64,000 nucleotides of DNA from Oikopleura dioica. Taxonomy: Eukaryota; Animalia; Chordata. Shown piece after piece: positions 1-18,131 of the stretch; the stretch's first letter is position 1, and every line of letters begins with the position of its first letter. The position numbers were made by a program, and so were the translations under genes. The notes below the pieces were generated by a model, which saw nothing but the letters and a program-made list of their open reading frames with translations, had not been told where the DNA came from and made no database searches. The stretch is taken from positions 2,418,001 to 2,482,000 of the forward strand of contig OU015569.1 in the NCBI GenBank assembly GCA_907165135.1, read 5' to 3'.

Positions 1-1
1 A

Positions 2-2068
2 GCAAACAGCTGCGGAGCGGCTGTGTACCACTGTGCCAAGACGTTGTCCATGGCCATAGCTCCACAATTTGTGGATCATTGCGGCAGACAATTAGAGGAA
101 GTAGTAGGAGGTATGGTCCTCATCGATGCCGCCAATGCGTTTGGCACGGTGGCTCATCCTCTGCTGATGAGCCTCCTGGGCCAATTCTGCTCGGATCTGT
201 TCCTAGGATTCATTGAATCATTTTTGATCAGGTCCTTTAAAGTATGCATAAGGGGTTTCCTTAGCGAGGAAAAAGAACTAGAGGCTTTTGGGTTGCCTCA
301 AGGCTCATCCTTGTCACCCATTGCATACAGCGTATTCAGCGCGGGCTTTCTTAAAAACCTCCGTTTAGATCCCGCTGAAGATAACTCTACCTGCGCCGAT
401 GGGGCACAAACGATGTGCAACTGCGATCATCATCCGGGTGGACGAACGAGCTGCCTCGAAAACGGTTTGATCCTTGGCGAAAGAAAGGACGACAATGACA
501 TTAGCGTTATAGCCGGACAGAAAGCCGCCTTCGCGGACGATCTGGCTGCATTGATCATCGCGCCAAACTCAACGGAAGCCGCCGTATCCCTGACATCCAC
601 GATCAGCCGAGCTACTAAGGAGATCAATGAAAAAGGGCTCAAGGTCGCTGAAACGAAGACAGAATGCTTCTTTGTCAGTAAGTCTAAGATCCCCGAGGAA
701 ATAACCTTTAACTCAACCACCATCAAAGCAAGTGAAAGCGTCAAGTACTTAGGAATTACCCTATCGGCAGAAAGAGGCAAAATATCCTATAGAATGCATG
801 ACATGAACGTCATGAGGAGGATGAGGGCGAATCATCATAAACTCATGACTCTTAAAGGAACGATATCACCAGTAGCAAATGCCAATATGGCAAGAGCTCT
901 GGACATCGGAGTCATTAACCACGGAGCGGACTACAAGCCACTACCTTGCATCTCTATCACCAAGAGTTGGCAAAAGATTTATTGTTATACCCTGGCTAGG
1001 GTCTCGCCAAGGCCATGGTATATTGTGGAAATGGAAAGAAAGCTAATCCTTGAGGGAGGAAACCTATCCTCAATAATGAGAACGCACGAACCTCTCTGGG
1101 TTTCACTGAATTATCAGAGACTTGTAGTAGGAAAGCCCAGAGCGGACGAAGGGCTCGAAACGCTGGACAGATTCCGGCAGCCAACAATCTTTGATAACCT
1201 GATCTGCATGGCTATCAACAATATGCATAAGGTATTCAGATTGCGCACACCGGACACAGCGTGGAAAGCTCTGAGAGGTTGTCTCATCATGGTCAATGAA
1301 AGAGGAGAAAGCATTGGTCCGTTATTCGATTTCGGACGATGTGACAGATACACCGAACACCTTAGTGAGGAAACTAGATTTAGTGATGTTAGAAAATATG
1401 GGTTGTTCACATCGAAAGAACACAGTCACATAACTAAACTACGTTTGAATAGAGCCAGATTTAGGGCACTCTTCAATGCACAGGCTGTGACAGTGCGGTT
1501 CACCCTACCTAGGTCTCAGGATAACGGTCTGAGAATTGACAGGACGCAATGGCCCTACAACATGATGGCTCATTTTAACGATCTGCCTGCAAGTGTAAGG
1601 GCGGACTTTGTGCAAGATTGGTTTCCGAGCAGTCTAAAGAGATTTATGAAAGACAAACATAAACACTGGAAACGAAAAATTTGGTGTGAAAAATGTAGAT
1701 ATAGTTCCCCGTTCTATAACTATGATCTGCAAGTCGAGCTAGGAGACGCTCATCAAGTTACTAGAAGCGCGAAAAGAACGTATAGCACAAAGGAGGACAT
1801 AAAAAGAGACAAGGAATACGATAAGTTATATGCAGAAATGCAGAATAACCAGGAAGACGCAAGCAAAATCCTGTCCATGCTCATTTGGTGGAGGCCATAC
1901 AGGCTCAATAATGTAGCATTCAAGGACTTCGAGGCTATAATGCAAGTCATTCGATACCTGATGGCATATAAAGGATCAGGCACAGATATCATGCGCTTGC
2001 TAGCAGAAAATGAGGTCTGTCGGGACAAGTTCGCCAGGAGCTGCGTCAAAACCCTGAAGTTTCTCTGA
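2..2068 (+). CDS. Reverse transcriptase, non-LTR retrotransposon type (5'-truncated by window edge)
   Basis: Frame open from base 2. RT motifs LIDAANAFGTV (D at 125), GLPQGSSLSP (~293-319), FADD (530-541) and KYLGITLS; C-terminal WCEKC. Intronless. Confidence 0.93.
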   Translation, partial: ANSCGAAVYHCAKTLSMAIAPQFVDHCGRQLEEVVGGMVLIDAANAFGTVAHPLLMSLLGQFCSDLFLGFIESFLIRSFKVCIRGFLSEEKELEAFGLPQGSSLSPIAYSVFSAGFLKNLRLDPAEDNSTCADGAQTMCNCDHHPGGRTSCLENGLILGERKDDNDISVIAGQKAAFADDLAALIIAPNSTEAAVSLTSTISRATKEINEKGLKVAETKTECFFVSKSKIPEEITFNSTTIKASESVKYLGITLSAERGKISYRMHDMNVMRRMRANHHKLMTLKGTISPVANANMARALDIGVINHGADYKPLPCISITKSWQKIYCYTLARVSPRPWYIVEMERKLILEGGNLSSIMRTHEPLWVSLNYQRLVVGKPRADEGLETLDRFRQPTIFDNLICMAINNMHKVFRLRTPDTAWKALRGCLIMVNERGESIGPLFDFGRCDRYTEHLSEETRFSDVRKYGLFTSKEHSHITKLRLNRARFRALFNAQAVTVRFTLPRSQDNGLRIDRTQWPYNMMAHFNDLPASVRADFVQDWFPSSLKRFMKDKHKHWKRKIWCEKCRYSSPFYNYDLQVELGDAHQVTRSAKRTYSTKEDIKRDKEYDKLYAEMQNNQEDASKILSMLIWWRPYRLNNVAFKDFEAIMQVIRYLMAYKGSGTDIMRLLAENEVCRDKFARSCVKTLKFL

Positions 2069-2130
2069 AACCTTTTCACTTAACTTAATTATGTTGTTCA
2101 GAAATAATCAAGCTGGACCAGCGATTGGAA

Positions 2131-4320
2131 ATGGTGAAGGCCATGACGAAACCGGACTATGCCCATGACTATGCAGTATTCTACCCCAGCTCCGGCAAAG
2201 TGAAAACGATCTCTCAGGCCATGATTAGGTCAGAAGGGTTAATCGAGAGGATGAACATCAAGCATGCTCTTCCTACCTTTTGGGGCGACGATGCTGAGCG
2301 AAGAAACCGCGTTATTAATGACTATAAGATGCCTGGCCACCTGATGGGACTATGCAACAAGTACTTCGCGGCATACGCGTCTCACTTCGGCAACTCCAAA
2401 GCCCAATTCAGGGCGTGGATGGGATTGAGTGCGCCGGTGCTTGGAGAAGATGCCCGTAGAAAGCGAATTGCGGTTCAAACTGCCTGGGAAAGAATCGCGA
2501 GTAAAGACAAATCCTCGTGGGGTCTAACATCCATCAACCTAATGGAGACCAGTGATCTACTCCGAAGCGACGAAGATAGGATGGCGAGACGATTGTTTGG
2601 CTCCTACTCGCTCGGCGGTGCAAACAGCCAAGAAACGAGCGCTGGCTTGGACCGCAAGCTGGAATCGGTTGCTGCTAGAGCGATTTTCTTTGAATATTTC
2701 CTACTACCGGGATGTGCCAGCATCATCCTCAACGATGTCAACGGACAAGCTGGCGCATGGACTGCAGCCAGAATGTCTGAATTAGCCCTGAGAAACAGGG
2801 ACAGTATCCTCACCAACCCGGCAACTGTGGAGAAGCTCAATAAAGTCCTGGAAGTAGCCAATGTCCTCAATGAAGCGGACATACGAACGACGATCGGGGA
2901 AAGGCACCACCTCGCGGGTATCGCCGTGAGTCTAGTCAACCACCCGAGCAAATTTGAAATTGAAGCGCTGAAGTCCGAAATTCCCAGAATCATTGCGAAG
3001 TTCAGCCAAGGTGATGATCATGAAGCCCTGCTCAACTTCGCGAATAACAGTGACGTCGGCGGAGCGATCATCGAACTCAACGGCAATCTGGAGAAAGTTT
3101 GCTTTGGTCTTGGAACGGAAACGATGAATGAAGCACGCAAGGTAGTGAGGTCCTCTTTTGGGGCTACGATGACGATGATGCTGAATGACCTTGCTCTACA
3201 CGCCATCAGCTCATTCTGCGAATTCTGCTCGTGCAAGAAAGACCAGAGTACGACAGCGAAGGCGAAGCTACAGGATAGAGTCGAAAACTGCTCGGATCTA
3301 CTCAGACGGTTCGTCACAATCGCGACTGAAGTTGGAAACAAACGTAAGTCAGGCCATAGCAGGATGGACACCAGAGCATTCATGGAAGGACTGATGCGAT
3401 TAGATCCAATCACCATCAGGCAACGCAGCGTATACGATCATTTCCAATGCATCATCAAGAGCAGAGGCTTCCATAGACTTAGACCCAGATGCCCGGCACC
3501 GCATATCATGTGGAGAAACAGGGCCTTTGGCAGCCTGATCCATCTAGAATTTTGCGAAGCCCTGCTGGTGCTTACGCAGCTTCTCTGCAAAAGCACTGGT
3601 CCGGGCTCTCTTTCCATTGTGGACCGGACGCAGAGAACAAGCTGCCTGCTATTTGCTGCAATAATAGGACAGATAAACGACATCATCTGCAGCATGACAA
3701 CCGCGCTCGGGACGCAGAATCTAACAGTGGACTTCTACGAAATGTCCATGACTGCCGGAAAAATGGCAGAAATTACGAATCTTAAAGCCAGAGACGAAAT
3801 TGTACTTGCAGGGAGCAGAACAACGCTCATGCACAGTGGTTTCTTCACTTGCGAGATCAGAAATATGGAAGAAAGGGAAAAACGGGAGATCTCCTCGCTC
3901 ATGGCAAGGCAGGAACGAGCACTCTCAGCGTTGAGGGCAAATGCGGTGGCGCAAGCTGAATTTGTTAACACTAATTTTGAAGGACACACACCGCAGCTCA
4001 TCTCCAACTTTGACTCCGATCACAAGCAATGTCCGATGATCTCCATGGTTCGCATAAACGAAACAAACCCAGGAGAGGGCATCGAATACACACTGCGCGA
4101 ATCAATCCACGCTGCCAGGATCCGAGCAATAATCAACTGTCGCAAGCGAAGGGGCGAACATATCCCACTCCCAGTAAGAGTCTGGGCTCACGAAAACGAA
4201 ACCACTGAAGAAGAAGAGGTGGAAATGCCTCAATTGTCATTAATCGACGACGAGGATGTGACTCGATCATCGTCAATGCTAAAAGTAACTATAAGACAGG
4301 GAAAAGAATATTTACGATAA
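2131..4320 (+). CDS. Intronless ~730-aa protein of unknown function directly downstream of the RT ORF
   Basis: Long uninterrupted ORF, ATG 62 nt after the RT stop, acidic C-terminal patch; no domain I can recognise. Confidence 0.85.
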   Translation: MVKAMTKPDYAHDYAVFYPSSGKVKTISQAMIRSEGLIERMNIKHALPTFWGDDAERRNRVINDYKMPGHLMGLCNKYFAAYASHFGNSKAQFRAWMGLSAPVLGEDARRKRIAVQTAWERIASKDKSSWGLTSINLMETSDLLRSDEDRMARRLFGSYSLGGANSQETSAGLDRKLESVAARAIFFEYFLLPGCASIILNDVNGQAGAWTAARMSELALRNRDSILTNPATVEKLNKVLEVANVLNEADIRTTIGERHHLAGIAVSLVNHPSKFEIEALKSEIPRIIAKFSQGDDHEALLNFANNSDVGGAIIELNGNLEKVCFGLGTETMNEARKVVRSSFGATMTMMLNDLALHAISSFCEFCSCKKDQSTTAKAKLQDRVENCSDLLRRFVTIATEVGNKRKSGHSRMDTRAFMEGLMRLDPITIRQRSVYDHFQCIIKSRGFHRLRPRCPAPHIMWRNRAFGSLIHLEFCEALLVLTQLLCKSTGPGSLSIVDRTQRTSCLLFAAIIGQINDIICSMTTALGTQNLTVDFYEMSMTAGKMAEITNLKARDEIVLAGSRTTLMHSGFFTCEIRNMEEREKREISSLMARQERALSALRANAVAQAEFVNTNFEGHTPQLISNFDSDHKQCPMISMVRINETNPGEGIEYTLRESIHAARIRAIINCRKRRGEHIPLPVRVWAHENETTEEEEVEMPQLSLIDDEDVTRSSSMLKVTIRQGKEYLR

Positions 4321-5140
4321 ATCCTCATTTTAGGGTCCGATTTGCCGACGTGACAGCAAAGCCGGACGAGGATAAGAAACCGTCAACAAAAACTCGGCGA
4401 TATTGATGTACGAAGCCGAGCCAGCGTACGCAGAAAAAGTTTTAAACTCCTTGTATCTCGTATATTACTTGTTCTTTTATTCTTTGAGAGTGATGGTGCC
4501 CCTACCCCCGTTAACTGTACCCCTTGAACCTCTATCCAAGTTCTCTCCTAGCCATGGGTCTGTGTAGTTCGGAATAGACAACTACATTTAGCAATCATAT
4601 AGCACCTTGTGCATATTTCATATTTCATCTGTCTAAAGAATACATAGATCTACTTGTACATGGGGCAGCACTTGTTTAAATATATTTCATAGTTACTGTA
4701 GTTACTTACATCCTCTCACATGTCAAATCCTTAACCATACATGTTGCCACATATCCCGCCGTAACCTATACATTAGCAATTATATATGCTTACATCATAC
4801 ACTTAGGCCCATCTAACCACGTGCATATTATGCTGCCCTCTCTATAAACAAGAAAAACATATATATCAATGACATATCCATAGGGACCCTCCAAACCAAA
4901 AAGAGATAGGAGGGCCCTCTTGCATCCTCGTAATGGTGTCTGTTGTTTATTCCAAAGCAAGTATACAGTAGGTTTTGTCACAGCAGATCGAGCGGTAAGC
5001 ACATTAGGTCATGCAAATAAAGCCAAAAACTCGCGATGAGGCAGTACGAGGATCACATCTGTAAGAAAAAGCACTACTGCAAGGACGGGACAGCAGAAGC
5101 ATTGTGAAGAAAAATGTAGGCTGGTTAACAGCGGGGCAGG

Positions 5141-5845
5141 CTAAGGCTGGTAGCGATTGACGGAAAGGCGAAGTCGTGCGGAGCGGCGAGTGCCGGAAGC
5201 AGTTACAGTAGGACGAGTCGAGGAAGTAGATGCATCAGAAACATCCTCGGATACAAAAGCAGCAGCTACGGTAGCGGGTGCAACTGTATCTAGGAAAGAT
5301 GGTGTTGGATTATGATGAGATAATTCATAATGATAAATTCTCTAAAAAAGGGTACAGACAGTACCTGTAGGTGTATAAGTAGCCAATGCATGACATGTAG
5401 GGCGATCTTGAGAGCTGAAGGACGCCTCGGCTGCTATGGCACTGCCAACAACGTTGGAGCCCGATGGAGACGCAACACCCTCTGCAAAGGCGTCATCATC
5501 ATCCTCAGCATCCCCGTCTTCGCTGGATGAGGAAGAGTCATCGTCCAGCTGCGAGGCAGAATGATCACTTTTCGCGACGATAGGAGTAGACGGACCATGA
5601 TCAGGGAAAACAATTCCCCTTACGTCGAAAGTCGCGGAACGCAAGCAGGTAGCATCAGGGCATGTAAGAATAGGATAAGCCGGTCGTGGAGTATCGGTAA
5701 CGTCGATGCCAGATCCCAAGAAACAACGCAAACAACCGGCATGTCGACAACGAACGTTCACAATTTCCTGCCGATAGGGAAACTTATAAGGACGACGACA
5801 GAATCGGCAGATTGAGCCAGGAGGAGTCTTGGTCTTGGACGACAT
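5141..5845 (-). CDS. C3HC4 RING-finger protein (~209 aa, 2 exons) with acidic linker and C-terminal RRSARLR motif
   Basis: CRFC...CRHAGCLRC...CPDATC. A GT-AG intron at 5364-5290 (75 nt) joins in frame to DTVAPAT...TRRSARLRLSVNRYQP*. Confidence 0.8.
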
Positions 5846-6042
5846 CAACAGCTCCTATGCACGCAACGAAGTCTAAAGAAACAACCTCTCAGACAAGATA
5901 ACGATAAGACTCAAGAGGAATTATTCTTATATTTCTGTATCATGTACAGTTTAAAATTATATTCAAAAGACATTTTCTGTGACAGAGAGGATACATGCCT
6001 GCACAGAGGATGAGAATTAGTCATTGTCATACAATGTTGGAG

Positions 6043-9000
6043 TTAAACAGTTGGTACAAGACTAAAATACATTGGGTTGAGACTCATGGGCAATGGCACC
6101 CGTAGGGAGACGAGCATCTTCTCGACAGGATCGTAGAAGGCCATGGGAGTCAAGAGAGGCACGGTCGTGGGTGATCGTCGAGTTTTGGAAGGAACGCGGT
6201 AAACACCGTAGACCCGTCTCATGTTCGCAGTCAGAAGAGCGTGGACGTCGTCAAGAACCCATCCTTTGCGCTCGCAGAGGTAACGACCAAGCGGACTCAA
6301 TCGGTTGGCACCCAAGGGGATCGGCCAACTGGAACGGACGACTGGAGCTCTTTAAAACAAGGATTGAAAAGGGCACAGGGCACGTGAAGAATTAATTACC
6401 TTGGTTAGTGGCCTCGACGACTGAAGAGGGCAGAAATTTCTGATGACGAGCCTCTCGATCGCCAACATAGGTACATTCCTTGAGCTTGGGAGAGACCTGC
6501 TCGAGGGGGCGGTAAGACCGCAGGTCGCGGATGAGGCGGATCCATCCTGCTGTGTTCGAAGGGCAATCCTTGCTGATGCAAAACTTGGATTTGCAGCGAC
6601 GAGCAGGCGCCAGCTCAGCGTGGAAAGCGGGAAAGACAGAGGTCAACATCCCGGACAAAGGGTTGGTGACATCGTGCAAGCTGGTGAGAACGCGATTCAG
6701 ACGCTCGAGAGTCTCGACTGGTCGCAATCCGTGGCGAAAAGGGTTATCGGCCCCAAGGCGAGTTCTTAGAAATTAAAATTAAAATCAAATCTAAATTTAA
6801 ATCTGAAACAAAAAGGAAGAGGACGATGGCCCATTATCATACCTCAAATCCAAAGCAGAGCGCTGAAAAGTGCCGGTCGGGTCACGCAAGGCGAGTAACT
6901 CAGCCGATGACTGGATGTAGGTCTGGTAGGTTGAAGCCAAAGCCAGGTAGTCACTAGTGAAGATAGGTTTACAGTCTGATAATAAAGACCGATTATATGC
7001 TTACCGCTCAAGGAAGCGGGGATTTCCACAGAAGCCCTCCATTCCTTCGGGGAGGAGAACAGAAGGAAAAGGCAATCGCGGGAACGAATCTGGCACGGGA
7101 GTATCATGATACCCGTTCGAACGATGCTGAGGATCGGCCATGAGAAGATAGCGGACATAAAGGCGGAAGGAATCCACGCGATTCGGAGTAAGATGATCAC
7201 AATCCACCAACAAATCGCCAGTGGACTTTCTTATGGAGCAGTTGAATCCGAAGAGGCGCAGAAGACATTGCAAGGAGGATGACTCTGCAAGATAGTCCTC
7301 GTAATCCTTAACGAAAAGTTTAAGAGCGAAGCTGAGAAACTTAGAGGACAAATGGGTAAAAGGTTACCTGGTGTGTTGGCTGCTTCATCTCGTCGGGGAA
7401 AAATAAACGGAGAAAAACGCCGGGCGAGGCAAAGTGGCAATCGGCCAGAGTCCGCTGGTGGTTACTTTGTCCAATCGAAGTCAAGGACGGGGCAGGAGGA
7501 TACACGACAACGTTTACGTCGAGAGGCGATCGCAGGTAGGTCGATTGCTCGCGCTGGCTTACGCAGCCATCCGTTACATCCCGAAGTTCGAAGAGGGGCC
7601 TGCATTGTCCATAGCGACAGATGGAGACGAAGAACTCGGACAAGAAATGAAGCGTCACCAAGCTAAAATAGTTAATCTTTCTTTGCAAATAGGTGTACGT
7701 GGTGGCTCAGAATAAAAGACTTACAGGGTACGACGCCCAACAGATAAGAGGAGGAGGCGAGAAGGCAGCCGCCTGAAGTCAAGCAAGTCTTGTCAAGACA
7801 AGTCAATAGACGAGGTCCGGCTCGGTGGTTTTGCAGTGGTGCGGTGCAGAAAGTTCTCGGAACATTTCGATTCATCAGATGCTGCAACAAGGAAGGTTGG
7901 AACCGCGTTTCGGGAGACAGGAAATAGACATAATCGCACTTCTGAAAGAACTCGGTTACTTCCGGTAGAGGACGATGTAGCAGCTTAATCAAGACAGTAA
8001 GTACTTACAGCACGTAGCAAAGCCAAAGATTGGGCGTGATTTCGAGCATGATCACGTGCCAGCGTCACTTCCATAGAGGTAGCACTTGCCTCGAACCGAC
8101 CAGAAGCGCCCTCGAGGAACTTGTCATTGATGAACTCTGGCCACATCAAGAAGCCCCGCTGGTCGTCGGCAGAAAGGGTTGGTAGAATCTGACGAAGGAA
8201 GTGCACAAGACGATCTAAATGTTAATGTGGTTAACTTTCAGTGGACTGGAAGCTCACACACAAGGATGATGTATAACCATCATCCTCTTAAAATAGAGCT
8301 CGATAGACTCACCTAGATCAGAGAGATTCAGGTCTCGCAAGTAGGCTGCCACGCGATCTGACACTCGAGCAGCTGGATTCTGGCTGAAAGAGCGGAGAGT
8401 AGCAACCATGCATTCGGAAGCGGCACGGCGGGACAGGGGCTTGCCGGCCACTTGTCGGGCAGCCAAGTTCAGCTGCAGAGCGCGAGAAAAGGGCGAAAGT
8501 TGTGAAGAATCCAGGGTTGTCAAGGTTGGCGGAGTAGTCCCATGCGTTCCGTAGCGTCTATCGCGAACACGTCGGTGAGAACTACCTCTGGTGCGGGCAG
8601 AGGTGGTAGCAGAGCTGGTAGACGCGGTGCCAGAAGGAGTCGATGAAGAAGTAGAACCAGTTGCAGCGTGAGACGCAGTACCTTGTGCAGCGTTACTGGC
8701 GCCGGTAGCGCGAGTGACGCGAGTCGTCGAAGTAGATGGCGCGGCGGTCTCATGCTCACCTGTTGTCGGAGTAACAGGGTTAGACGAGCTGGCCCCAACC
8801 TCGCCTGGACCCGAAGAAGTAAGGGTTGAATCGGAAACTGCAGGAGCAGGAGGTGAGGAGTTCTGACCGTCAGCTGCTGAGGGGGACGATGCAGGAGGAT
8901 CCTCGACGGGAGTCTCGACTCTAGTACCATTCAGGTCGCCATCTATATCATCAGGAACGTCGAGATCGATGAAGTCATTATGAGACACATCTTCATGACC

Positions 9001-9255
9001 CTCAGGAGATGGAGGAGACGCTGGTGACGAAGGTGGGGTGTGCCTTTGTGGAGTAGGTGACCTGGACTGAGCAGGAGCCGGGGAAGTCTCGGGTGCTGCG
9101 GTCGCGCTGGGAACGTCAGTGTCCGCAGCACTCGTTTGTGTGTCCATGGGCGTCGCAGCTGGAGGAGTGGACGCTGTAGAAACGGGAGATGTTGGTGGTG
9201 GCGAAGGTTGAGCACTCGTTGTTGCAACGTTCGGTGTATGAACGGGAGCGCCCAT
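6043..9255 (-). CDS. Multi-exon orphan protein(s): long Ser/Thr/Pro/Ala-rich N-terminus followed by a Cys/His-containing globular region
   Basis: Consecutive minus-strand ORFs join in frame via GT-AG introns at 7004-6954, 6842-6765 and 6399-6348, plus less certain introns near 8255-8210, 8008-7940, 7724-7660 and 7366-7305. The junction near 7720 is ambiguous, so this could be two genes. Confidence 0.68.
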
Positions 9256-9352
9256 CGTGGCCCTCACTTGCGCGGTAGCGAGCAAATGCTCTTCGGGTCC
9301 TAAAGAATAGTATTTGTCAAGACTGGACTTAATAATTAGCAGGTACCTGCAT

Positions 9353-10775
9353 CTACCAAGACTGAGACTTTATATCCGCCGGTTCCGTCCCCCTCCACTA
9401 AATAACGAGCGTTCAAATAGGAGGGTGGTGTGGCATCATCCTCATCGTCGCTTGGCAGAGGTGACCGCTGACGCATGGGGACAGTGTACTTGTGCAGCAC
9501 GTCAGTGAGAGTCGTCAGAGAGGGGCCAACATGAGTTAGGTCAGAAGTTTGGTAACTTTCAAGAGGACGGTCTACAGAAAATCAGCTAAGTGATCTGAAA
9601 ACAACTGAGGCCTTAATACCTGATTCAAACGAAGTCAACTCATACAGCGCCAAACGCACGCGATGTTCGGCATAGATGGTGTAATGCTGCATGTCTGTAG
9701 AATCAGGCAAGACACTGTGATCAGGAGAGATGACTCGACAGAACATCAGCAAGTACTTGGCATCTGACCCTAACGAAGAGATACGAGATCGGTAATCATT
9801 CCCGAACGAGGACCATACACCAGCCTTGAAATTGAAATTAAAATAATGATAAGAATAAAGCGGTGAGCAGTTGGGTAGCAGGCTGTATCTAGTGTACTCA
9901 CGTTAAACATGTTTTGGAGAAGCCGGCAAGTAGTGGCGGTAGGGCGCACCTCCTGCAGAAGAGTAGGAAGATGACTCATCATCCTCGACAGCACGTGAGC
10001 AGGCGCAGAGACACGACGAAGAAAGTAGTTGACGCTGAAGAATGAAAATTTATGCTCCAAACTACAGATAACTCAAACATACCTCTCGTGCAGCAGATTG
10101 TAGGTAGGCAAGTGCGGGATTAGTCGGCTTTGGGAGACTTCCAAAGTCGTCTGATGGCGGATGTGATCCGAAAAAATCTCGAACAGGTCCACCAGTCGTA
10201 CCACTAGTGCTCGGAGCTTTTGAATCTTCATCCGGCGATTAGAAAGATGATTCAGGGCCGGGTTGAGAAGGTAAGTGACCATATCCGAGCGTAAGGGTGC
10301 TAGGTAGATCACGAGCTGCCGGTCAAGTTGCTCACAAGCATGATGGCCGAGACTCGTGAGTTGTTGGCGTGATAAATCCCTGGAGAGTACGTCGCGGAGA
10401 CTCTGTGTCACTACCTAAAAACATGCTTACAACGAACAGTCGACCTGCCAAAACACTGTACCTCGTCAGTTATCTCTGCGGAGACGCGAGTAAAATGGTA
10501 AAGCGCCGTGGAATACTCGATGTTATCGGGTCGGATCGTTGAAGTCGAGGTTAAAGTAGACTCCAACAACTCCCCTGGGCATTAATCGAGACGAAGGAGG
10601 AAGTGGGAAAGCTTGCGGAAGATGTTGAGGGCTGGTCAAGATCCTCAGGAAGTCGTACAGGCGGCTCCTCGGAACGCCGCTTTTTCTTGCTGGGGCCTTC
10701 ATCAGTGGGAGAAGCGGGACGACCGCCTGACACAGATGGTGCATCACCATCGCAGGGGGCAACATTAGAAGGTTC
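9353..10775 (-). CDS. Multi-exon orphan protein with NLS-like PSKKKRR
   Basis: In-frame exon chain through introns at 10616-10570 (GC-AG, 47 nt), 10461-10415 (47), 10082-10035 (48), 9901-9825 (77) and 9619-9572 (48). Ends at ...KSQSW* (9353) or splices onward. Start exon lies upstream of 10775. Confidence 0.68.
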
Positions 10776-10942
10776 CTACAAAAATGTTAATGAAATGTGA
10801 AAATGTGGCCAACACCCACAATGATCCAACCCTAGAATAGGACCTTAAATAGGACACGAGGATGATGTCTCACCATCCTTTATTTTAAGAAATTCTATCA
10901 CACGGGAGACAAGTCAATTTATCGTCAAAATAGGGCAATCTC

Positions 10943-11492
10943 TTACACACTCCATAAATCTGGCTCTAATAGAAGGCGCAGCTCAAAAATGACTGAAGGA
11001 TCGGCAATAAAGTCCAGCTGAAATCTAAAGCTTAAAAACTTAAATTGAAAAACCCGTAATTCTCTAGACCTAACTTTGTTTTTGTGAGCATATGGACGAG
11101 GATGCTCGAGCGTCCTGTAAGAATTGCGGTGATATATCATCAACGGTCAGGAAAGTCGAAGGGTTAGCGTAAAAGTAAACCCGGATATATCCCATTTCTC
11201 ACCAAGGCCCACGGGGGCAAGACTCGATAAGTCGGTAATCTGCAATACTAGTAGATCTAACCTGTTCGGGGAGCTCGGACAAGCGAGCTGTGTAGAGGCG
11301 CACGGGAGTCGCAGGAAAATCGCCAAAGGATATCATCCCAAATATTTTCTCGGAGTCAGGAGACATGACGGAGTCACGGGGAAAAACGAATTGGCGGCGA
11401 GCTTGAACTAATTCGTATAAGATGCTGCCTTCAGGTGACCGAAAGCGCAAATGACGGAAAGAGTGGCGCGAAGCCCTCACAACAACACACAT
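10943..11492 (-). CDS. First exons of the antisense cassette (MCVVVRASRH...), unknown function
   Basis: ATG directly preceded by TTTTCTAG; GTGAG donor near 11201 joins in frame to ...TLEHPRPY; the link to the 10775 exon was not resolved. Confidence 0.5.
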
Positions 11493-12986
11493 TCTAGAAA
11501 ATTTTCAGCTAAATCTGGGGAAAATTTCCGCCAGGAATTCCTGGAAAAGTCGATTCCAAGAACACATAAGCAAAAATAATAAGGGGTTCTAGAAGATCAC
11601 TGCGTTACATATTCATCGTCGAGAGCCCCATTTTTCTTCACAATTTTCGCTCCTCTACTATTTCTTCTTCTCTTATCATTATCACTCTCACTGCATACAG
11701 CAGTGGGTTTCAGTAAACAGTTTACTAGGATATGGTAAGTTCGCTGTGTGCACACCTGCTTATTACAGGCAGGAAAGAGAGACGCCGCTTTCAGGAGGAT
11801 GATCTCTCTTCATGATCGGGCAGCTGCCAGATGGCATGATTGAAATCTAGAGGTCAAGGGCGGTCAAGCCCATGACGGACGCGTGAGCGTGATTCGCCAC
11901 GACGAATGACGCATCGCCACCACGCAGTCGCATGACGCGAGAAGTGATCTCACCCGTTTATTACGACCCAGAGGAACTACGCCAATAATACGACTACATG
12001 CACGGACTACAAGTTAAATGATTGCGTAGAAGTGGGGGTCAAGGAAGAGGATGTCATGTCATCATCCTCGGTGCCCATACGCAGAACAGCTTCAATAGGA
12101 TGATGCTAGGGCACAATAGTCAACGATACATCCACCGATTCCTGCAACTAATGATGATGAGGTCCCAGTACTCCTCCACCGCTAATTTCCTGCCAATTCT
12201 CCCCAAGAAGATCAAGAAGAAAAACACTTATGTACAACCTTCCTACTCTCCTCTACCCATTCCCCCCATGTTTCATCTTATCACCCTTTGTAACACCCTG
12301 TGTACCTATCACTACCCAACTATATAGTGCTATTTATTACTACTCATATTTAACACGTCCTGCGACTGTCTCACCTTAGTCATGCTGCCATTCCCACTTT
12401 TCTATCCATGATAGACGTACACTTTGCATTTGCCTATTCCTTGAACTTCTGTTTGCTAACCTCTTATTCTACATATCACACTCGTCTTGTATAACTAGGA
12501 TGATGATGGTGCATCATCCTAGTTTATTATATATAAACTATTATCAGCAACTGCAATAAGTCAGTTCATTTATTTCACATATATTCAATTGTTTGTACAG
12601 GAGTTGGCCTGCTTGTCAGGTAAACTGCCACCTTACTTGTCAGAATCTGCTTCCAATAAATATAAAAAAGCGGGCCAGCCGTGTTTACTGAGTTGAAATT
12701 TCGTAAACACTATTCAAGCTAACGAAATTACAGACTCCTCCTTAGTAATATCCCTGTTTCCAAACAAACATCAAAAACGCAGGTCTACATTTATTTCACT
12801 CTTACAAGCAGAATGACTGTATTTTAGCTGTACTTGACCAGCGGATCGACGGATATCCGAAAGAAAAAAGCCTGATTTTTAAAACGTGGATCTGCTCAAG
12901 TTGGAAATCAAACAATGCAAACTGCGGCTTTTGCATTTCGACCACCAGCTCAGATAACCAAATGCCCTGCTGAGTTTTTATTTTAT

Positions 12987-13810
12987 CTATTTTTGCATTC
13001 TATTATCTTCTTGATCAGACAATCGTGCAGATTTTCGAATCTTTCGACGAGTTGCTCGTCCTGGGGTGCTGTCTGCAGCAACGACGTTGGCCATTTCTTG
13101 AAGCTAAAATAATCAAATTACATCAACTGATGCAGAATTATCATAGGAATTAGTAAGAGAAAAGACTTCTCTCGGACTTACCACTTCATCCCGTCCGGCT
13201 TGCTTCGCGGTTTTTTTCGACTCTTCCATTTCCCTCTTCATAACTTTGCGGCAATTTCCAACCTACAAGTAGCGTTTCTTTTTCGAAAATTAAACCCATA
13301 GCGACGTACCGCTTCATCCACGAGAGCCTGAATCGCCACTTGAATATCCTCTTCTTTGGACGATGTCGTTTGAGTTGAAACATCGCGAGTGGGCCTAAAT
13401 AAAAATAATTAGTAATATTAAAAAAGAAATGATTCTTACGGCTTTTTCTTCGAGGCTTCTATCTCTTTCTTCAAATTTTCATTCTCTTCCTTCAAATCAT
13501 CAATCTCTTTCTTCTGATCTTCCTTCTTTTTCTTCAAAACTTTATTTTTCTTCTTGAATTCCTCGGCCTGCTCAACCCACTGTCTTTTTCTGAGCTCGGA
13601 TCCTTCTAGTTCTTCAATTTTTTGTTTGTAAGCTCCCTAAATGAATCAGAATATGTGTGGAAATAAACGAAAATTCGAATGGGAAAAAGAAATCATACAT
13701 ACCTGAAGGGTTTGAACTTTCGAAAAATAGTCGTCGCACTTTTGATTGAGCTCCGTTTTCTCTTTTTCGTGTTCAGCCTCTACTTGATAGAGGAGTTCCC
13801 GTAAACCCAT
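12987..13810 (-). CDS. Multi-exon coiled-coil protein, unknown function
   Basis: Exons MGLRELLYQVEAEHEKEK..., GAYKQKIEELEG...EIEASKKK and ...RKSARLSDQEDNRMQK* with GT-AG introns; E/K-rich heptads. Confidence 0.55.
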
Positions 13811-14030
13811 CGTACAATTTTGAATCCTCTAGCTGGAAAGAAACTTTTAGAAACTTGATTTTGAAAATGAGTGAGTCCAGATTGCTCCGCGCCGATTCTC
13901 GAAATGAAAATCAGCGCGTAAGCAAAATCAAGAAACGAAACGCCGCGCCACATTTCCTTTTGAGAACCGATAAAGGCATTTCGCCCAACTGAGCGTTTAT
14001 CATTGTGATAAATTCAATAACCCTTTGTTA

Positions 14031-15024
14031 TGGGCGACCCTTTGTTACTCGATAAAACGCTGGCGCTTTTGGGTTAGTTACTCAATAAAACGATGGCGCA
14101 GCAAAAAAAAATTTAATCGGTAAAACGATGGCACCCTTGTTAATCGAGGCGCGGGGCTCTCTTGCATGACGTCATCAGAGGACTCTTGCTGAAAAAAATA
14201 ATGGAAAAGGGGATTCGAGCTCGCGCCCGCCACTCACTTTAGTTACCCCTTAAGGGGTAGCACTAACCACTCAGCTAGACTAATATGTTGAAAGACCCAC
14301 ATTTACAAGGGTTTATTGTTACATTTTCTCACATGGGAGCTCAAATGGTTCTCTCAGAAAATCATTGAATTGAGCTGAGCTGAGCAGGACATTTCAGAAA
14401 TCACTGACGTGAGCTCTTGGCTCGGCAAACTGAGCTGTGCTGGGCTCGGCATCCTGACCTGTCTAAAAACCTTAGACAGGACCTGTTTCCTGTTTTTTGG
14501 CCCTGTCCTGTGTAGCTGTCCAAAATTGGGATTAAAATCTCGAAACCCTGTTTCTGTCCCTGACTAAAGACATGCCGGTTTACTTAACCAATTCTATTTT
14601 AATAAAGTGAAAGTGATGCTTTTAGGTTATTACTACTTACTTACTTTTAACCCATATGTTACGAAGTCACTTTTACTCATTATATACCTTAAGATTTGAA
14701 GTCAAGAATCAATTGCCAAGAAAATCAATCAGCCCAATAGCCTATCTCCCCAAGAGCTTCATGTCCCCAGCCTGGGCTAGGAGCATTTCCGTGTATTCAA
14801 AGTGCATGTCTTCAACTTATCTATCTTCCTGCAAGAGAGTCCTCCGATGACGTCACGCCAGAGAGCCCCGCGCCTCGATTAACAAGGGTGCCATCGTTTT
14901 ATCGATTAAATTTTTTTTCGCCGCGCCATCGTTTTACCGATTAACAGAGGGCCGCCCGCCACAGTTTTATTGAGTAACTAGTTAAAAAGCGCCAGCGTTT
15001 TATCGAGTAACAAAGGGTCGCCCA
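14031..15024. mobile_element. Non-autonomous DNA transposon with ~160-190 bp TIRs
   Basis: 14031-~14190 is the reverse complement of ~14830-15024. TGGGCG...CGCCCA ends; reiterated GATAAAACGATGGC subterminal motif; TGTTA on both flanks (possible 5-bp TSD). Confidence 0.75.
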
Positions 15025-16762
15025 TGTTATGAATCATTTTATGATCATGGCCGGTCTTTTCAACCCTGTAAATTTTCCCTAGATAATCAATGTTTGTAAA
15101 TTAGAAGAAAAGTTCATCGAAATCATTAATTCTAGCTTCTCAATTTCGACAGAGCTAGATTTATGCAGACACCGCGCCCGAATCATCCTTAGCATATTTT
15201 TTTGATTTCACAAAAAACCAGAATCTCAGCATTGCGAACCGGTTGTTTATTATTTTTCCTGCGAATGGGATAATTGACTAACTCGGTTTGACTGAGTGGC
15301 GAATATTCAACTAGGAAACGTGAGCTCAGCTGGAGGAGCAGATGCGCCGTCCGTTGACACTTTCTCACTCTTGGGCCAATGTTCCTGCTCCGCGCTTCTT
15401 TAGAGCGGCAAGTTTAGATCTTCAATGTTTTCACTCTCGTTTCGACTCCTCAGACGCGCCCTGAGAATGTTAAATTAAAAGCAAAAAGTTGCGCGAGGCG
15501 GCATTCTCGCCAAAACAACTGTTAGCTGTCCAGCACTCACTTAGTTGCGGTTCCACTTAAAACGACGTTCTTCTGCTTCATTAGAAAATTTCCCTCTTTT
15601 TTCCGAATCGAATCGATGACTACAGCTACACCAAACAACATCCTTCAGCCGCGTGTTTCTTGCTTCTTCCCATGGAACCTCAATTCGAACTCAAATTCTT
15701 CAAGGCAACCACGTCTTTTTTCTCGAGTGCATGATTACTAAAATCTACTATCATAAAATTCGATTTGCAAAACGTTTGATAGAATGCGTGTACTTAGAAG
15801 CGATCAGAATCATCCAACGCTGCGAGGATTGCAAATCGGCCGCAGATTTGGCTTCTTCCGACAATTGAATCATTTTAGCCTGGCCAGCCTAAGCCGAGGC
15901 CCAAATCGAACAGATTTGCGGGCAATTAATACCTTTTTTTCTGTATTTGAAATTTTATTACCTAAGTCACGTTTAAGTCTATTTGACTGACGGAAAGTCT
16001 TTTTGATTTTAGAACAATATCGGTACGTAAATCGTTAGTTCTAACATAGAACTTCTATATAGGCAGAAGAAAACCTTTTGAACCTTTTGAGGCTTTGAAC
16101 CTTTTTTTTACCAAAGCAAAAATAGTCATAATACTTGTAGAAGGCAGTTAGAAAGCCTTGATAATCTGATATTGTCTTTTGACTAATTGAAAATTTAGGC
16201 TTTCAAGAAAAAAAAATAAAGAAAGAAGATCGTCTTTCTTTCGAAAAATTAAAATAAGTATTTCCTCCGTCACAAAAGTGCCCATTTCTTTATTGATAGG
16301 TTTTGAAGAACATTGAAAAAAAACCGATTTTATAGTAGATTTTCAATAATTATCGCTTGATAAAGATGACCTATTGACTTTTGTGATTATTTAATTGAAC
16401 TACTTTGGTATGATTATATATTTTCAAAACAAAGCACTTTCAAAAGAAGCTCAAGTTTGATCCACCAACAACTTGCTTGCGAAAAGTTGGTTACCTAACT
16501 GACTGCTGAAAGAATAAGCGCAGCGACATTCTAGCGCGGGCAAAACAGCGCCACCTTTTACGCGCCGCGGCTTCGTTAAAACGCGCCCTGCTCGGACAAG
16601 GCGGATTAATTTGCAAAAAGTAAAATTTGAGAAAACCGACTCGAATTGAGAATTTTTTTTGTGAATTTTTGTTGAAAGCATTTTCGAAAATCAGTTGAGC
16701 GCGATTCCTGAGATCAAGGAAGAAACAGCAGCTTCAGAATAAGAAAAGAAAGAGGAAGAAAA

Positions 16763-18131
16763 ATGAAGGTTCTAGCATCGATTATTTCCACCGCTTTCTG
16801 CCAGAATATTGCGACTAATGTTAGAGGTATGTATTCAGTTGTTTCTATTGCAAGTTTTGAATCTAGACTTTTTAGCTGTAATTTATGGGGTCTCTTCCAA
16901 TTCTTTTGAATTCAAAATAAAACGGCTTCTTTTGAATTCGTGAATTTTATTTAAAAAAAATTTGATCATTGTGGCCCAATTTTCTGTTAATTATAAATAC
17001 AATTCTCCATTTTTAATTCTTTGTAAGAAAAATCTAAAAATAGAAACCAAAAATAATCGGCTTTTTTCAAGAGCAGTTACACCTTTTGCCGTTTTTCTGT
17101 CTAATTTGATTAGATGACATAGATTATTTTATTTGCTGTGAAAATACTTGGTCTTGGAACGTGAAGTAATCTTTTGGAGCAATTGTGATTGGAGTAAATA
17201 CTTCATCGCCGACACTTTACTCGCCGTTTGATAGTAATTCCTTTTCGTGTAAAAATTGTTCAATCAAAATTAGTGTTTACAGAAAATACTGAGAACTAGA
17301 ACGCGCGATGTCCAATCGCTGCCATCAGAGAGATACATAGTGATAAGAGCCTGCGTAAACATGGATTTCGATGTAAAAATTACCTGATTCGGATGCCCGT
17401 TACATTTTCGCTAGCAAAGATAATATTTAGAGATGATGTCCGCTATCAACCCGGCGATGGAGCAAGTGGCCTACGAGAACTACGGCTGCGTCGCGCGCGG
17501 CTTCTTCGATCCTATCTCCAAGAACCTTGGCGAGCCTGTCGATGCCGTCGACAGGGCTTTCAACAGGTGGAAGAACTGCAGACGATGTGCCAAGAATGCG
17601 TTTGAAAAGACAGAACCAATGATCCTTCCTTATTCATACGACCTTTCAGCTCAAAAATGCCGTAAGTTTAAACTTTAAAGCTACTTTTCATTCTTTACTG
17701 AAGTTAAATTCAACTGAATATTTTATAACTTAGATGCCATATTAAGTTTAGAATCTGTGTTTGAATCTAATTGTAAATTTAAGTCGACGAGTTGAATTCT
17801 GTGGAAAGATCAGTCTGCGAGTGTGACCTTGAGTTCGCACTGAGACTCGACTCTGTTCCGTTGGATCCATCGCTGGCAGACTATGATGAAGGCAATTGCG
17901 CTTTTCTTAAAAACAGGAACGTTTTTCTCAATCAATTGCTTTTTGACAATCTTTGGTTGATAATCTATCGGCCGAACATTGATTCAATTCGTGGTTGAGA
18001 AAAACCGTGCCAGATCTAAACCCAACCACGGTTGCTGCGCGAAATCAAGCGGCTCCTTCCAATGGTACAATGCAGATCTGATGTGCTGCGATCGCTCAGG
18101 AGGGCTAAAGGCGATAGGCGAGTGTCTATAA
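16763..18131 (+). CDS. Secreted phospholipase A2-like domain protein, catalytic His/Asp absent
   Basis: Signal-like MKVLASIISTAFC; YENYGC, PVDAVDRAFNRWKNCRRC and VCECDLEFA motifs; Cys-rich C-terminal tail; multi-exon. Confidence 0.75.

What the first reader, a model, noticed from the sequence alone, without database searches (positions are those of the whole stretch)
1..12670. Candidate giant LINE-like retroelement carrying an antisense, intron-containing gene cassette
Seen: an intronless non-LTR RT ORF and an intronless orphan ORF on +. Facing them is ~6.3 kb of minus-strand coding sequence with at least 12 short spliceosomal introns. A hairpin motif runs through that cassette to 12524, followed by AATAAA-TATAAAAAA at 12655-12669, where T-run-rich host sequence resumes. 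Established: retroelements lose sense-strand introns, but introns antisense to the element RNA are not spliced and survive reverse transcription. Inference: this orientation is what a >12-kb retroelement needs to carry spliced accessory genes. I know of no LINE clade with this layout. Alternative: the element ends near the + strand AATAAA at 5016-5021 and the minus-strand genes are host genes.
Basis: partly seen in the sequence, partly recalled or inferred. Interest (0 to 1): 0.85.

Follow-up and report, generated by a model that had tools for sequence, protein, structure and literature searches.

The report
Giant LINE carrying antisense spliced gene
The window opens inside a roughly 19-kb jumping gene (a LINE retrotransposon) of the tunicate Oikopleura dioica that carries a conserved, many-intron gene on the opposite strand, a layout that lets introns survive copying through RNA and that I could not find described for this class of element.

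Summary
The window is Oikopleura dioica OKI2018_I69, chromosome XSR. It starts 6.2 kb inside an 18.9-kb element.

On the + strand lie an intact, intronless 2623-aa ORF1 (APE endonuclease and reverse transcriptase) and an intact orphan ORF2. Two minus-strand genes with short GT-AG introns follow. A + strand AATAAA and A-run at 12655-12669 end the unit.

- **Same layout elsewhere:** six other, highly diverged O. dioica loci (sense ORFs 24-40% identical, unrelated flanks, two populations) show the same order: ORF1, ORF2, collinear minus-strand homologues of the window's exons (26-36% identity), then AATAAA and poly(A) of 11-18 A beyond the antisense gene.
- **Shared introns:** intron positions and phases are shared between families.
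- **Ends of the unit:** in two loci a 7-8-bp target-site duplication brackets the whole unit, next to a shared 5' terminus TTCTTTCA.

The function of the antisense protein is unknown: it has no Pfam or PDB match and the AlphaFold models were unusable. No transcript data were available. The hairpin motif is real but not confined to the cassette, and it remains unexplained. I could not check the original description of the Odin clade.

The parts
1..2068 (+). C-terminal 689 codons of ORF1, the element's APE-RT polyprotein. The full ORF is 2623 aa and starts 5.8 kb upstream of the window, at L001 9738. It has no intron.
   Evidence: RVT_1 E=2.6e-11. The whole ORF carries Exo_endo_phos at aa 1384-1577 and RVT_1 at aa 1888-2189. 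It is 22-46% identical to ORF1 of the other loci.
2125..4320 (+). ORF2, a 731-aa orphan protein. It is intronless and conserved in position in all related elements.
   Evidence: No Pfam match and no word-index homologue. It is 29-35% identical to L002 17696-19754 and 23% to L004/L007. It lies at the same position in 8 loci. dN/dS is 0.11 between two copies of the L007 family. The AF2 model is unusable, pLDDT 41.
4321..5140 (.). Convergent spacer between the sense genes and the antisense genes. It holds a + strand AATAAA at 5016-5021 and minus-strand AATAAA signals at 4951-4946 and 4481-4476.
   Evidence: Sequence read directly and hexamer positions. No poly(A) tract occurs here in any locus.
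5141..5845 (-). Antisense gene A: 209 aa in two exons with one 75-nt intron at 5364-5290. It has a RING-like Cys/His pattern and an acidic/Ser tail. It is seen only in this family.
   Evidence: Public gene model at L001 20682-21386. The 168-aa ORF is, the intron consensus cagGTACTG..TTTCCTAG. No Pfam match and no homologue in the other loci.
6043..11492 (-). Antisense gene B: a multi-exon gene with at least 11 well-supported short introns. Its product would be over 1000 aa. It includes a 340-aa Ser/Thr/Pro-rich exon (9299-8262), an NLS-like PSKKKRRSEEP (exon 10775-10554) and a conserved H..C-x4-C-x4-C motif (exon 6764-6400). The 5' limit is uncertain.
   Evidence: Stop-free segments. Collinear homologues in L002, L003, L005, L006, L008 and L010. 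Alignments A3-A5. The public model at L001 21584-29351 runs on into the host flank and is probably over-extended.
6342..6399 (-). Intron between the last two conserved exons, phase 1 (aagGTAATT..CTCCAG).
   Evidence: Same position and phase, 12 residues after a conserved [FLY]FP, in L001, L002, L003 and L005.
7307..7367 (-). Intron, phase 0 (cagGTAACC..GTTAAG).
   Evidence: Same position and phase in L002, after the conserved FFPDEMK..HQ / VFSDEVK..HK.
7663..7720 (-). Intron, phase 2.
   Evidence: Matching phase-2 donors after the homologous peptide in L002 and L003.
9572..9619 (-). Intron, phase 1 (cagGTATTA..TCTGTAG).
   Evidence: Same junction and phase in L002.
8215..8312 (-). Intron of 98 nt, or 47 nt if the donor at 8261 is used. 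It contains a perfect 9-bp copy of the hairpin motif at 8263-8286.
12151..12185 (.). The 35-nt block best conserved at DNA level with L002 outside the RT core. It is a candidate cis element: a 3' UTR signal of the + RNA, or the antisense promoter or leader.
   Evidence: 91% identity over 35 nt to L002 27305-27339, while the surroundings do not align. Only 21-32-codon + ORFs end here.
12493..12525 (.). Terminal 13-bp perfect hairpin of the GGATGATG/CATCATCC motif, about 140 nt from the 3' end. A minus-strand TATATATAA at 12535-12527 lies just outside it.
   Evidence: -19 kcal/mol, z=-5.0 on the + strand and z=-7.9 on the minus strand. A TATA box in the same relative place occurs in L002.
12655..12669 (+). 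3' end of the element: AATAAA, then TAT, then A6.
   Evidence: Read directly. The equivalent AATAAA-N3-17-A11-18 ends six other loci beyond their antisense genes.
12670..12677 (.). 3' copy of the putative target-site duplication, GCGGGCCA.
   Evidence: The 5' copy GCGGCCA lies at L001 9345-9351, immediately before the 5' terminus TTTCTTTCA. L002 has a perfect CGCCCTT pair in the same two places.

Best explanation
Window 1-12669 is the 3' two-thirds of a single, apparently intact 18.9-kb non-LTR (LINE) retrotransposon of Oikopleura dioica. It spans L001 9352-28210 and probably belongs to the clade called Odin. The element codes on both strands.

**Shown.** The + strand carries an intronless 2623-aa APE-RT polyprotein and an intronless orphan ORF2. 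The 3' 7.5 kb carries, on the minus strand, two intron-bearing genes. The larger one is conserved in every close family examined. The unit ends with a + strand AATAAA and an A-run.

**Inferred mechanism.**
- A full-length + RNA is transcribed from the 5' UTR through the cassette and polyadenylated at the far AATAAA.
- ORF1p nicks the target with its APE domain and reverse-transcribes that RNA from its poly(A) tail (target-primed reverse transcription), which leaves short target-site duplications.
- In the + RNA the cassette's introns read CU..AC, not GU..AG. The spliceosome therefore does not remove them, and they are copied into each new insertion.
- The antisense genes are transcribed inward from a promoter in the element's 3' end (a TATA box at 12535-12527 on the minus strand), spliced normally, and end in the convergent spacer at 4.4-5.0 kb.

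**Probable origin.** An ancient 3' transduction of flanking DNA before the families diverged, followed by retention under purifying selection. That would mean the protein serves the element; a nuclear, zinc-binding regulator or cofactor is my guess.
For: **1. Identity and completeness**
- The window is 100% identical to OU015569.1, and the upstream ORF1 is intact.

**2. Conserved linkage**
- L002, L003, L005, L006, L007/L010 and L008 each show ORF1(+), ORF2(+), then collinear minus-strand homologues of window exons 6046-10414.
- Similarity between loci is confined to the elements; the flanks do not match.
- Sense ORFs are 24-40% identical and antisense exons 26-36%.

**3. 3' ends**
- AATAAA plus A11-A18 lies on the + strand beyond the antisense gene in six loci, 8.5-10.6 kb past the ORF1 stop in five of them (3.5 kb in the internally deleted L007). 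None has a poly(A) tract at the junction of ORF2 and the cassette.

**4. Boundaries**
- A perfect 7-bp duplication in L002 and a 7/8-bp duplication in L001 sit immediately outside the poly(A) tail and immediately before the same 8-mer TTCTTTCA.
- The 5' boundary is independently defined in the L007 family, where a 96.6%-identical metagenome copy has a different 5' flank.
- There are no LTRs or TIRs and no ribozyme or other Rfam family.

**5. Introns**
- The sense ORFs have none.
- Antisense introns sit at the same residue and phase in 2-4 families.

**6. Selection between two L007-family copies**
- dS is 0.09-0.12 for ORF1, ORF2 and the antisense exon alike.
- dN/dS is 0.075, 0.11 and 0.30, against 0.65 and 1.15 for off-frame controls.
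- Invariant His/Cys residues occur in exon alignment A4.

**7. Element decay**
- L002 and L005 have broken sense ORFs, as expected of dead transposon copies.
Against: - No RNA evidence of any kind: neither the 19-kb + transcript nor the spliced antisense mRNA was seen.
- The window's own tail is only A6, and its duplication has a 1-nt indel. No duplication was found for L003, L005 or L007.
- No second copy of the window's own family was available, so insertion polymorphism is untested.
- The reference L007 copy has lost all but the last antisense exon and still carries a 3' end. The cassette is therefore not needed for a copy to persist in the genome.
- Two more distant O. dioica RT loci (L012, L013; 22-24% RT identity) show extra + ORFs and no detectable homologue of the antisense gene.
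- The antisense proteins have no recognisable domain, so the claim that they serve the element is inference.
- The dN/dS for the antisense exon rests on only 20 substitutions.
Confidence: 0.85

Rival explanations
1. The LINE ends at the + strand AATAAA near 5016-5021, and the minus-strand genes are ordinary host genes that happen to lie next to it.
For: - An AATAAA followed by a short A-rich stretch exists at 5016-5029.
- The public annotation treats the cassette as host genes, and its model even runs on into the flank.
- The cassette proteins have no transposon-related domain.
Against: - The same antisense gene follows the RT and ORF2 in six other diverged loci with unrelated flanks.
- Poly(A) tails lie beyond it, never before it.
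- Target-site duplications bracket the composite.
- High G+C extends through the cassette and drops only after about 12 kb.
Confidence: 0.02
2. Two independent mobile or multicopy units. The cassette is a separate element or gene family, and the LINE is site-specific for a target beside it, as Tx1L is for Tx1D or R1/R2 for rDNA. The association recurs without co-transposition.
For: - Site-specific LINEs exist (established knowledge).
- A weakly similar ..GATTTGAAAT.. lies 15-30 nt past the poly(A) in several loci, which hints at some target preference.
- Only about 8 loci were sampled.
Against: - The LINE's own poly(A) tail and AATAAA are on the far side of the cassette, so the cassette lies inside the reverse-transcribed unit.
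- The duplications in L001 and L002 enclose both parts.
- dS is equal for ORF1, ORF2 and the antisense exon in the L007 family.
- No cassette without an RT appeared among the loci fetched.
Confidence: 0.06
3. A domesticated, immobile gene cluster. An RT-derived host gene and its convergent neighbour were multiplied by DNA-level duplication rather than by retrotransposition.
For: - Each family seems to be single-copy in the protein collection; the 90% clusters hold 1-2 members.
- Strong purifying selection acts on ORF1.
Against: - Poly(A) tails of variable length abut unrelated DNA.
- Short duplications flank the unit.
- The L007 family shows a sharp 5' boundary with different flanks.
- Some copies have frameshifted ORFs.
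- The APE and RT domains are retained.
- Low copy number per family is typical of O. dioica transposons (from memory of the published TE surveys; not stated in PMC4402516).
Confidence: 0.03
4. The unit is one retroelement, but the antisense region is not a protein-coding gene. It acts as spliced antisense RNA, for example in regulation or piRNA production, as proposed for the Drosophila telomeric LINEs.
For: - HeT-A and TART have antisense promoters and conserved spliced antisense transcripts (PMC5537684).
- Convergent transcription would make double-stranded RNA.
- No domain is recognisable.
Against: - Conservation is at the protein level only: 26-48% amino-acid identity with non-alignable DNA.
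- There are invariant Cys/His residues and long stop-free exons of up to 371 codons.
- dN/dS is 0.30 in frame against 0.65-1.15 out of frame.
- Intron phases are conserved.
Confidence: 0.04

Closest known systems
Odin, the non-LTR retrotransposon clade reported from Oikopleura dioica (Volff et al. 2004, cited from memory; named in PMC8008620)
   Same: - Same host.
- It is a LINE-type RT.
- All of the roughly 20 best relatives of this RT among 1.84 billion proteins are O. dioica proteins or unnamed marine-metagenome and sequencing-run contigs. That fits a larvacean-specific clade.
   Different: - I could not obtain an Odin reference sequence or the original paper, so membership and the published structure are unverified.
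- PMC8008620 states that Odin is almost absent from this very assembly. Yet intact and decayed elements are present there, annotated as genes (g13921, g11947).
- I know of no description of an antisense multi-exon gene in Odin.
Drosophila telomeric LINEs HeT-A, TART and TAHRE
   Same: - They are non-LTR elements with unusually long 3' UTRs.
- They have antisense promoters in the UTRs.
- They produce antisense transcripts with conserved splice variants (PMC5537684).
   Different: - No conserved antisense protein-coding gene of over 1000 aa with a dozen introns is known there.
- They target chromosome ends and lack this ORF2.
- The element here sits in ordinary chromosomal sites and has an APE domain.
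Primate LINE-1 ORF0
   Same: An antisense ORF inside a LINE, driven by an internal antisense promoter (established knowledge; the reviews listed).
   Different: - ORF0 is about 70 codons, lies in the 5' UTR, is primate-specific and has no internal introns; it splices outward to host exons.
- Here the antisense genes fill 7.5 kb at the 3' end and are conserved across deeply diverged families.
Antisense genes of LTR elements and retroviruses: HTLV-1 HBZ, and the antisense ORFs of plant Tat-lineage Ty3/gypsy elements such as Grande and RIRE2 (from memory)
   Same: The logic is the same. A gene antisense to the genomic RNA has its own promoter in the 3' part, and in the case of spliced HBZ it has an intron that survives reverse transcription because it is antisense.
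   Different: - Those are LTR elements or retroviruses with one intron or none.
- This element has no LTRs, uses APE and target-primed reverse transcription, and has about 12-16 introns.
Terminons and other bdelloid retroelements that capture extra ORFs (PMC5408684; Arkhipova et al. 2017, from memory)
   Same: Giant, expandable retroelements that accumulate accessory ORFs beyond the RT.
   Different: - Terminons use Penelope-like Athena RTs, have mostly co-oriented ORFs, carry hammerhead ribozyme motifs and attach to telomeres.
- Here there is an APE-LINE RT, no Rfam ribozyme and an opposite-strand cassette.

Membership tests
Non-LTR (LINE) retrotransposon, APE type | Reverse transcriptase domain of the non-LTR type | tested here: met
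   RVT_1 at E=3.9e-14 in ORF1. The best outside relative carries Exo_endo_phos plus RVT_1.
Non-LTR (LINE) retrotransposon, APE type | Apurinic/apyrimidinic-like endonuclease N-terminal to the RT | tested here: met
   Exo_endo_phos E=4.4e-7 and Exo_endo_phos_2 at aa 1384-1598, upstream of the RT at aa 1888-2189.
Non-LTR (LINE) retrotransposon, APE type | No terminal repeats (LTR or TIR) | tested here: met
   No direct or inverted repeat of 30 nt or more in L001 9000-28600.
Non-LTR (LINE) retrotransposon, APE type | 3' end with a polyadenylation signal and an A-tail abutting the flank | tested here: met
   A6 in the window. A11-A18 in L002, L003, L005, L006, L007 and L008.
Non-LTR (LINE) retrotransposon, APE type | Target-site duplication around the whole insertion | tested here: inconclusive
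   A perfect 7-bp pair in L002 and a 7/8-bp pair in L001, both beside the shared 5' terminus TTCTTTCA. None was found in L003, L005 or L007.
Non-LTR (LINE) retrotransposon, APE type | 5'-truncated copies that share the 3' end | not testable with these tools
   This needs a whole-assembly nucleotide search; no O. dioica genome collection can be searched by DNA here.
Odin clade | RT groups with published Odin sequences in a phylogeny | not testable with these tools
   No Odin reference sequence is available and the paper is not held. Only host and clade specificity agree.
Penelope-like elements / Terminons | PLE-type RT with GIY-YIG or no endonuclease, hammerhead ribozyme motifs, telomeric repeats at the 3' end | tested here: not met
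   An APE endonuclease is present. There is no Rfam hammerhead or other family. The 3' end is AATAAA plus poly(A).
LTR retrotransposons and retroviruses with an antisense gene | Long terminal repeats; integrase, protease and RNase H | tested here: not met
   No LTRs. Pfam finds only APE and RT.

The most novel reading that the evidence does not exclude
A larvacean LINE clade codes on both strands as a rule. Alongside its sense-strand genes it maintains an ancient, intron-rich antisense gene for a nuclear, zinc-binding protein. That gene is passed on through reverse transcription with its introns intact, because they are antisense to the template RNA, and it is needed for the element's own propagation or for evading host control. 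This would be the first non-LTR retrotransposon with an obligatory spliced accessory gene, and a natural counterpart of the antisense-intron trick used in engineered retrotransposition reporters.
Probability: 0.55. Interest if true: 0.85.

Novelty: new variant of a known kind. Interest (0 to 1): 0.8.

Why it matters
LINEs are regarded as compact, one- or two-ORF, intron-free elements, because everything they carry passes through a spliced RNA stage. This element shows a route by which a non-LTR retrotransposon can triple its size and carry a normal spliced eukaryotic gene: the gene is placed antisense.

- **A natural test case.** It allows study of how introns behave in retrotransposed DNA, how a 19-kb LINE RNA is made and copied, and what accessory function is worth that cost in the most compact animal genome known.
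- **Consequences for annotation.** In the Okinawa assembly these elements are listed as host protein-coding genes, while the genome paper reports the LINE clade as almost absent (PMC8008620). Gene counts and repeat estimates for larvacean genomes are affected.
- **Gene movement.** Conserved antisense cargo may also be a way of moving genes within and between genomes.

Tried and rejected
- **Strand-skew argument.** The + strand is purine-rich through both the sense and antisense parts of L001, which looked like a replication signature. L002 does not show it, so I dropped the argument.
- **Depletion of poly(A)-signal hexamers on the + strand.** None was found in four loci. Uninformative.
- **Home-made splice-aware dynamic-programming gene finder.** It also threads the + strand and over-calls introns. 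I used it only to list candidates. Only introns with good consensus or cross-locus support are reported.
- **Hairpin as a sequestered 5' splice site.** This fits 2 of 6 copies only. Rejected.
- **Hairpin as a peptide motif.** On either strand it reads DDDE.PSS or RMM..HHP, and all loops are multiples of 3. Conservation is at the nucleotide level and some copies lie in non-coding DNA. Left unexplained.
- **Function of the proteins.**
  - Pfam on 24 pieces gave nothing beyond APE and RT.
  - PDB profile searches with A3-A6 and with the two halves of ORF1 gave nothing.
  - AF2 of exon alignment A4 reached pLDDT 50.7, and of ORF2 alignment A6 pLDDT 41. Both are too poor for a fold search, so none was run.
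- **Word-indexed protein searches.**
  - The RT found only 2 distant hits, because its relatives are 2500-2900 aa and outside the length window.
  - ORF2 and exon 6395-6772 found nothing.
  - No transcript-derived fragments were recovered.
- **Metagenome scan with exon alignment A3.** The scan with L007 ORF2 gave L009 and L010.
- **Target-site duplications in L003, L005 and L007.** Not found.
- **Internal paralogy and second copies in the window.** None.
- **L011, L012 and L013.** No secure homologue of the antisense gene.
- **Joined exons.** All searches were made exon by exon, by reference.

Full report
**Where the window comes from**

An exhaustive HMMER search with the window's RT frame found very long relatives (2500-2900 aa) that the length-limited word search had missed. 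One of them, P0006, is gene model g13921 of Oikopleura dioica OKI2018_I69, chromosome XSR. Its locus L001 (OU015569.1:2402460-2432375) is 100% identical to window 1-14375, with window base 1 equal to L001 15542. Host exons elsewhere in the window (TSP1, somatomedin B, galactose-3-O-sulfotransferase, RING) fit an animal genome. None of the sequence is human.

**Checking the observation**

- **Sense ORFs.** The + frame is open from base 2 to 2068 and carries RVT_1. ORF2 (2125-4320) is an uninterrupted orphan.
- **ORF1 upstream of the window.** The RT frame continues as a single 2623-aa ORF (L001 9738-17609), with an APE endonuclease at aa 1384-1598 and the RT at aa 1888-2189.
- **Minus-strand coding.** The minus strand of 5345-11500 holds twelve stop-free segments of at least 100 codons, against three on the + strand.
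- **Introns.** There are many short GT..AG intervals with good consensus and low G+C.
- **3' signals.**
- **Composition.** G+C is 45-56% from L001 9500 to about window 12000 and 33-42% outside that range.
- **Hairpin motif.** It has six good copies between 8264 and 12519 and none in the remaining 51 kb. Two copies are very stable: 13 bp at -19 kcal/mol with z=-5.0, and 9 bp with z=-5.4.

**The decisive comparison**

Contigs encoding other relatives of the RT were fetched. They come from the Okinawa assembly (L002, chromosome PAR), the two Bergen assemblies (L003, L005, L006, L007, L008) and marine metagenomes (L004/L009, L010, L011).

- **Divergence.** Their sense ORFs are only 24-40% identical to each other.
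- **Flanks.** Similarity between L001 and L002 is confined to the elements; their flanks do not match.
- **Shared order.** In every one of the six O. dioica families, ORF1 and an ORF2 homologue are followed by minus-strand homologues of the window's exons. These lie in the same order and at 26-48% amino-acid identity. Window 6046-10414 matches L002 20898-25692 in nine segments. Fewer segments match in L003, L005, L006 and L008.
- **The L007 exception.** The reference L007 copy keeps only the last exon. A 95%-identical metagenome contig of the same family (L010) has five collinear exon homologues, so L007 is an internally deleted copy.

**Ends of the unit**

| Locus | 3' end on the + strand, beyond the antisense gene |
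|---|---|
| L002 | AATAAAATACC-A15 |
| L003 | AATAAATAAATAT-A15 |
| L005 | AATAAATGATTCATATAC-A11 |
| L006 | AATAAATTTCAATAT-A18 |
| L007 | AATAAATTTTAACAGT-A14 |
| L008 | AATAAACAATCAAT-A12 |
| Window | AATAAATAT-A6 |

- These ends lie 8.5-10.6 kb past the ORF1 stop in five of the six other loci and in the window; in the internally deleted L007 the distance is 3.5 kb. None of the loci has a poly(A) tract at the junction of ORF2 and the cassette.
- In L002 the 7-mer CGCCCTT that follows the tail recurs at 9565, directly before TCTTTCA.
- In L001 the flank GCGGGCCA recurs as GCGGCCA at 9345, directly before TTTCTTTCA.
- The L007 family's 5' end is defined independently. A 96.6%-identical copy has a different upstream flank and begins TTCTATTTTTCA.
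- The window's element therefore spans L001 9352-28210 (18,859 bp). L002's spans 9572-27704 (18,133 bp).
- There are no LTRs or TIRs and no Rfam family.

**Introns**

The sense ORFs have none. In the antisense gene the intron before the last exon lies 12 residues after a conserved [FLY]FP, in phase 1, in L001, L002, L003 and L005. Three more junctions share position and phase in two or three families. These proteins are about 30% identical, so the introns predate the split of the families. They have been inherited along transposon lineages that show poly(A) tails and target duplications. That is what the antisense orientation allows.

**Is the antisense region a protein gene?**

- Conservation is visible only at the protein level. 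The DNA of L001 and L002 aligns nowhere in the cassette.
- Exon alignments show invariant His/Cys (H..C-x4-C-x4-C) and other invariant columns.
- Between two L007-family copies, dS is alike for ORF1 (0.124), ORF2 (0.093) and the antisense exon (0.113).
- The matching dN/dS values are 0.075, 0.11 and 0.30, against 0.65 and 1.15 for the two wrong frames. The antisense figure rests on only 20 substitutions.
- The window's protein also has an NLS-like KKKRR and a 340-aa Ser/Thr/Pro-rich exon.

**Function**

Function remains open. Pfam, PDB sequence and profile searches and two AlphaFold runs gave nothing usable. All searches were made exon by exon, by reference.

**State of the copies**

| Locus | ORF1 | ORF2 |
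|---|---|---|
| L001 | intact | intact |
| L007 | intact | intact |
| L003 | one break | intact |
| L002 | in pieces | in pieces |
| L005 | in pieces | intact |

This is the usual mix of live-looking and decaying transposon copies.

**Cis features**

- The only non-coding block conserved between L001 and L002 is 35 nt at window 12151-12185 (91% identity).
- Both elements have a minus-strand TATATATAA 90-145 nt inside the 3' end. This is a plausible antisense promoter, but that is inference.
- No AATAAA or ATTAAA separates gene B from gene A on the minus strand. The two may form one transcription unit. O. dioica resolves operons by trans-splicing (from memory), but this was not tested.

**The hairpin motif**

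- Its half-sites are enriched over the whole element.
- A 35-nt version recurs at non-homologous places: in ORF1 of L001 and at the end of ORF2 in L002.
- L003 has none.
- I cannot say what it does.

**Limits**

- No RNA data were available.
- No second copy of the window's own family was found.
- Target duplications were seen in only two loci.
- More distant RT loci (L011, L012, L013) have extra ORFs but no secure homologue of the antisense gene.
- The original Odin description could not be read, so prior knowledge of this layout cannot be excluded.

**Literature**

- The Okinawa genome paper says Odin LINEs are almost absent from this assembly (PMC8008620).
- The nearest published parallels I found are the antisense, spliced transcripts of the Drosophila telomeric LINEs (PMC5537684) and the antisense ORF0 of primate L1.
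- Searches for 'ambisense' or antisense-intron retrotransposons found nothing comparable.

**Verdict**

The element is best described as a new structural variant of a LINE that carries genes on both strands. What remains unproven is expression and the role of the antisense protein.

Noticed in passing
window 41333-44586: A 56-nt tandem array of 58.7 copies at 98% identity. Its unit contains a GC-rich hairpin (GGCCCTTCGGGCC). It is flanked by short ACGGC/TGCCG microsatellites at 41204-41250 and 44898-44922.
   Followed up: no
window 18532-18751 and 25550-25788: Two copies (about 85% identical) of a roughly 220-240-nt palindromic, MITE-like unit. Each has 53-77-nt inverted arms and internal AAAGCCGC..GCGGCTTT hairpins. 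They lie 7.0 kb apart.
   Followed up: partly
window 14030-14186 and 14836-15025: 110-nt inverted arms (92% complementary) built of 33-35-nt subrepeats GCCATCGTTTTATCGATTAA, 1.4 kb beyond the element's 3' end. This looks like a foldback or MITE-like structure.
   Followed up: no
window 37285-37809 (-) and 40067-40696 (+): Two RING-finger ORFs in inverted orientation with mutually similar neighbouring sequence, suggesting a local inverted duplication. A galactose-3-O-sulfotransferase exon at 39132-39578 lies between them.
   Followed up: no
L001 28211-28260, L002 27705-27745, L003 27162-27190, L006 13936-13975: The DNA just after the poly(A) starts G+C-rich. At 15-30 nt further on it reads ..GATTTGAAAT.. 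or a close variant in several unrelated insertion sites. This may be a target-site preference.
   Followed up: partly
L003 1826-4711 (minus strand): A second, inverted RT-like stretch (21-23% identical to ORF1) lies 5 kb upstream of the L003 element. It is another LINE remnant at the same locus.
   Followed up: no
L011 (ENA metagenome ERZ508537, 18.9-kb contig), 5312-18331: A distant relative with RT 20-24% identical.
- It has a 2123-aa ORF1 and a 657-aa ORF2, followed by 3.7 kb of minus-strand exon-like ORFs and a possible AATAAA-A8 end.
- The minus-strand ORFs do not align to the O. dioica antisense gene. The one exception is a weak hit of the last-exon profile, E=0.023, in the expected place.
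   Followed up: partly
L012 4872-20951 and L013 7575-20013: More distant O. dioica RT loci carry three to five co-oriented + ORFs around the RT. They show no detectable antisense-gene homologue and no long poly(A). This is a different architecture within the same host.
   Followed up: partly
L001 10001-19916 and 21584-29351; L002 10001-19940: The public annotation of OKI2018_I69 lists the element's ORFs as host genes. Models g13921 and g11947 splice ORF1 to ORF2. The annotation also extends the antisense gene 1.1 kb past the element's end into the neighbouring host gene.
   Followed up: partly
window 4326-4345 and L003 27170-27185: The 12-mer GGGTCCGATTTG occurs just after the ORF2 stop in the window and again in the 3' flank of the L003 insertion. 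This may be chance.
   Followed up: no
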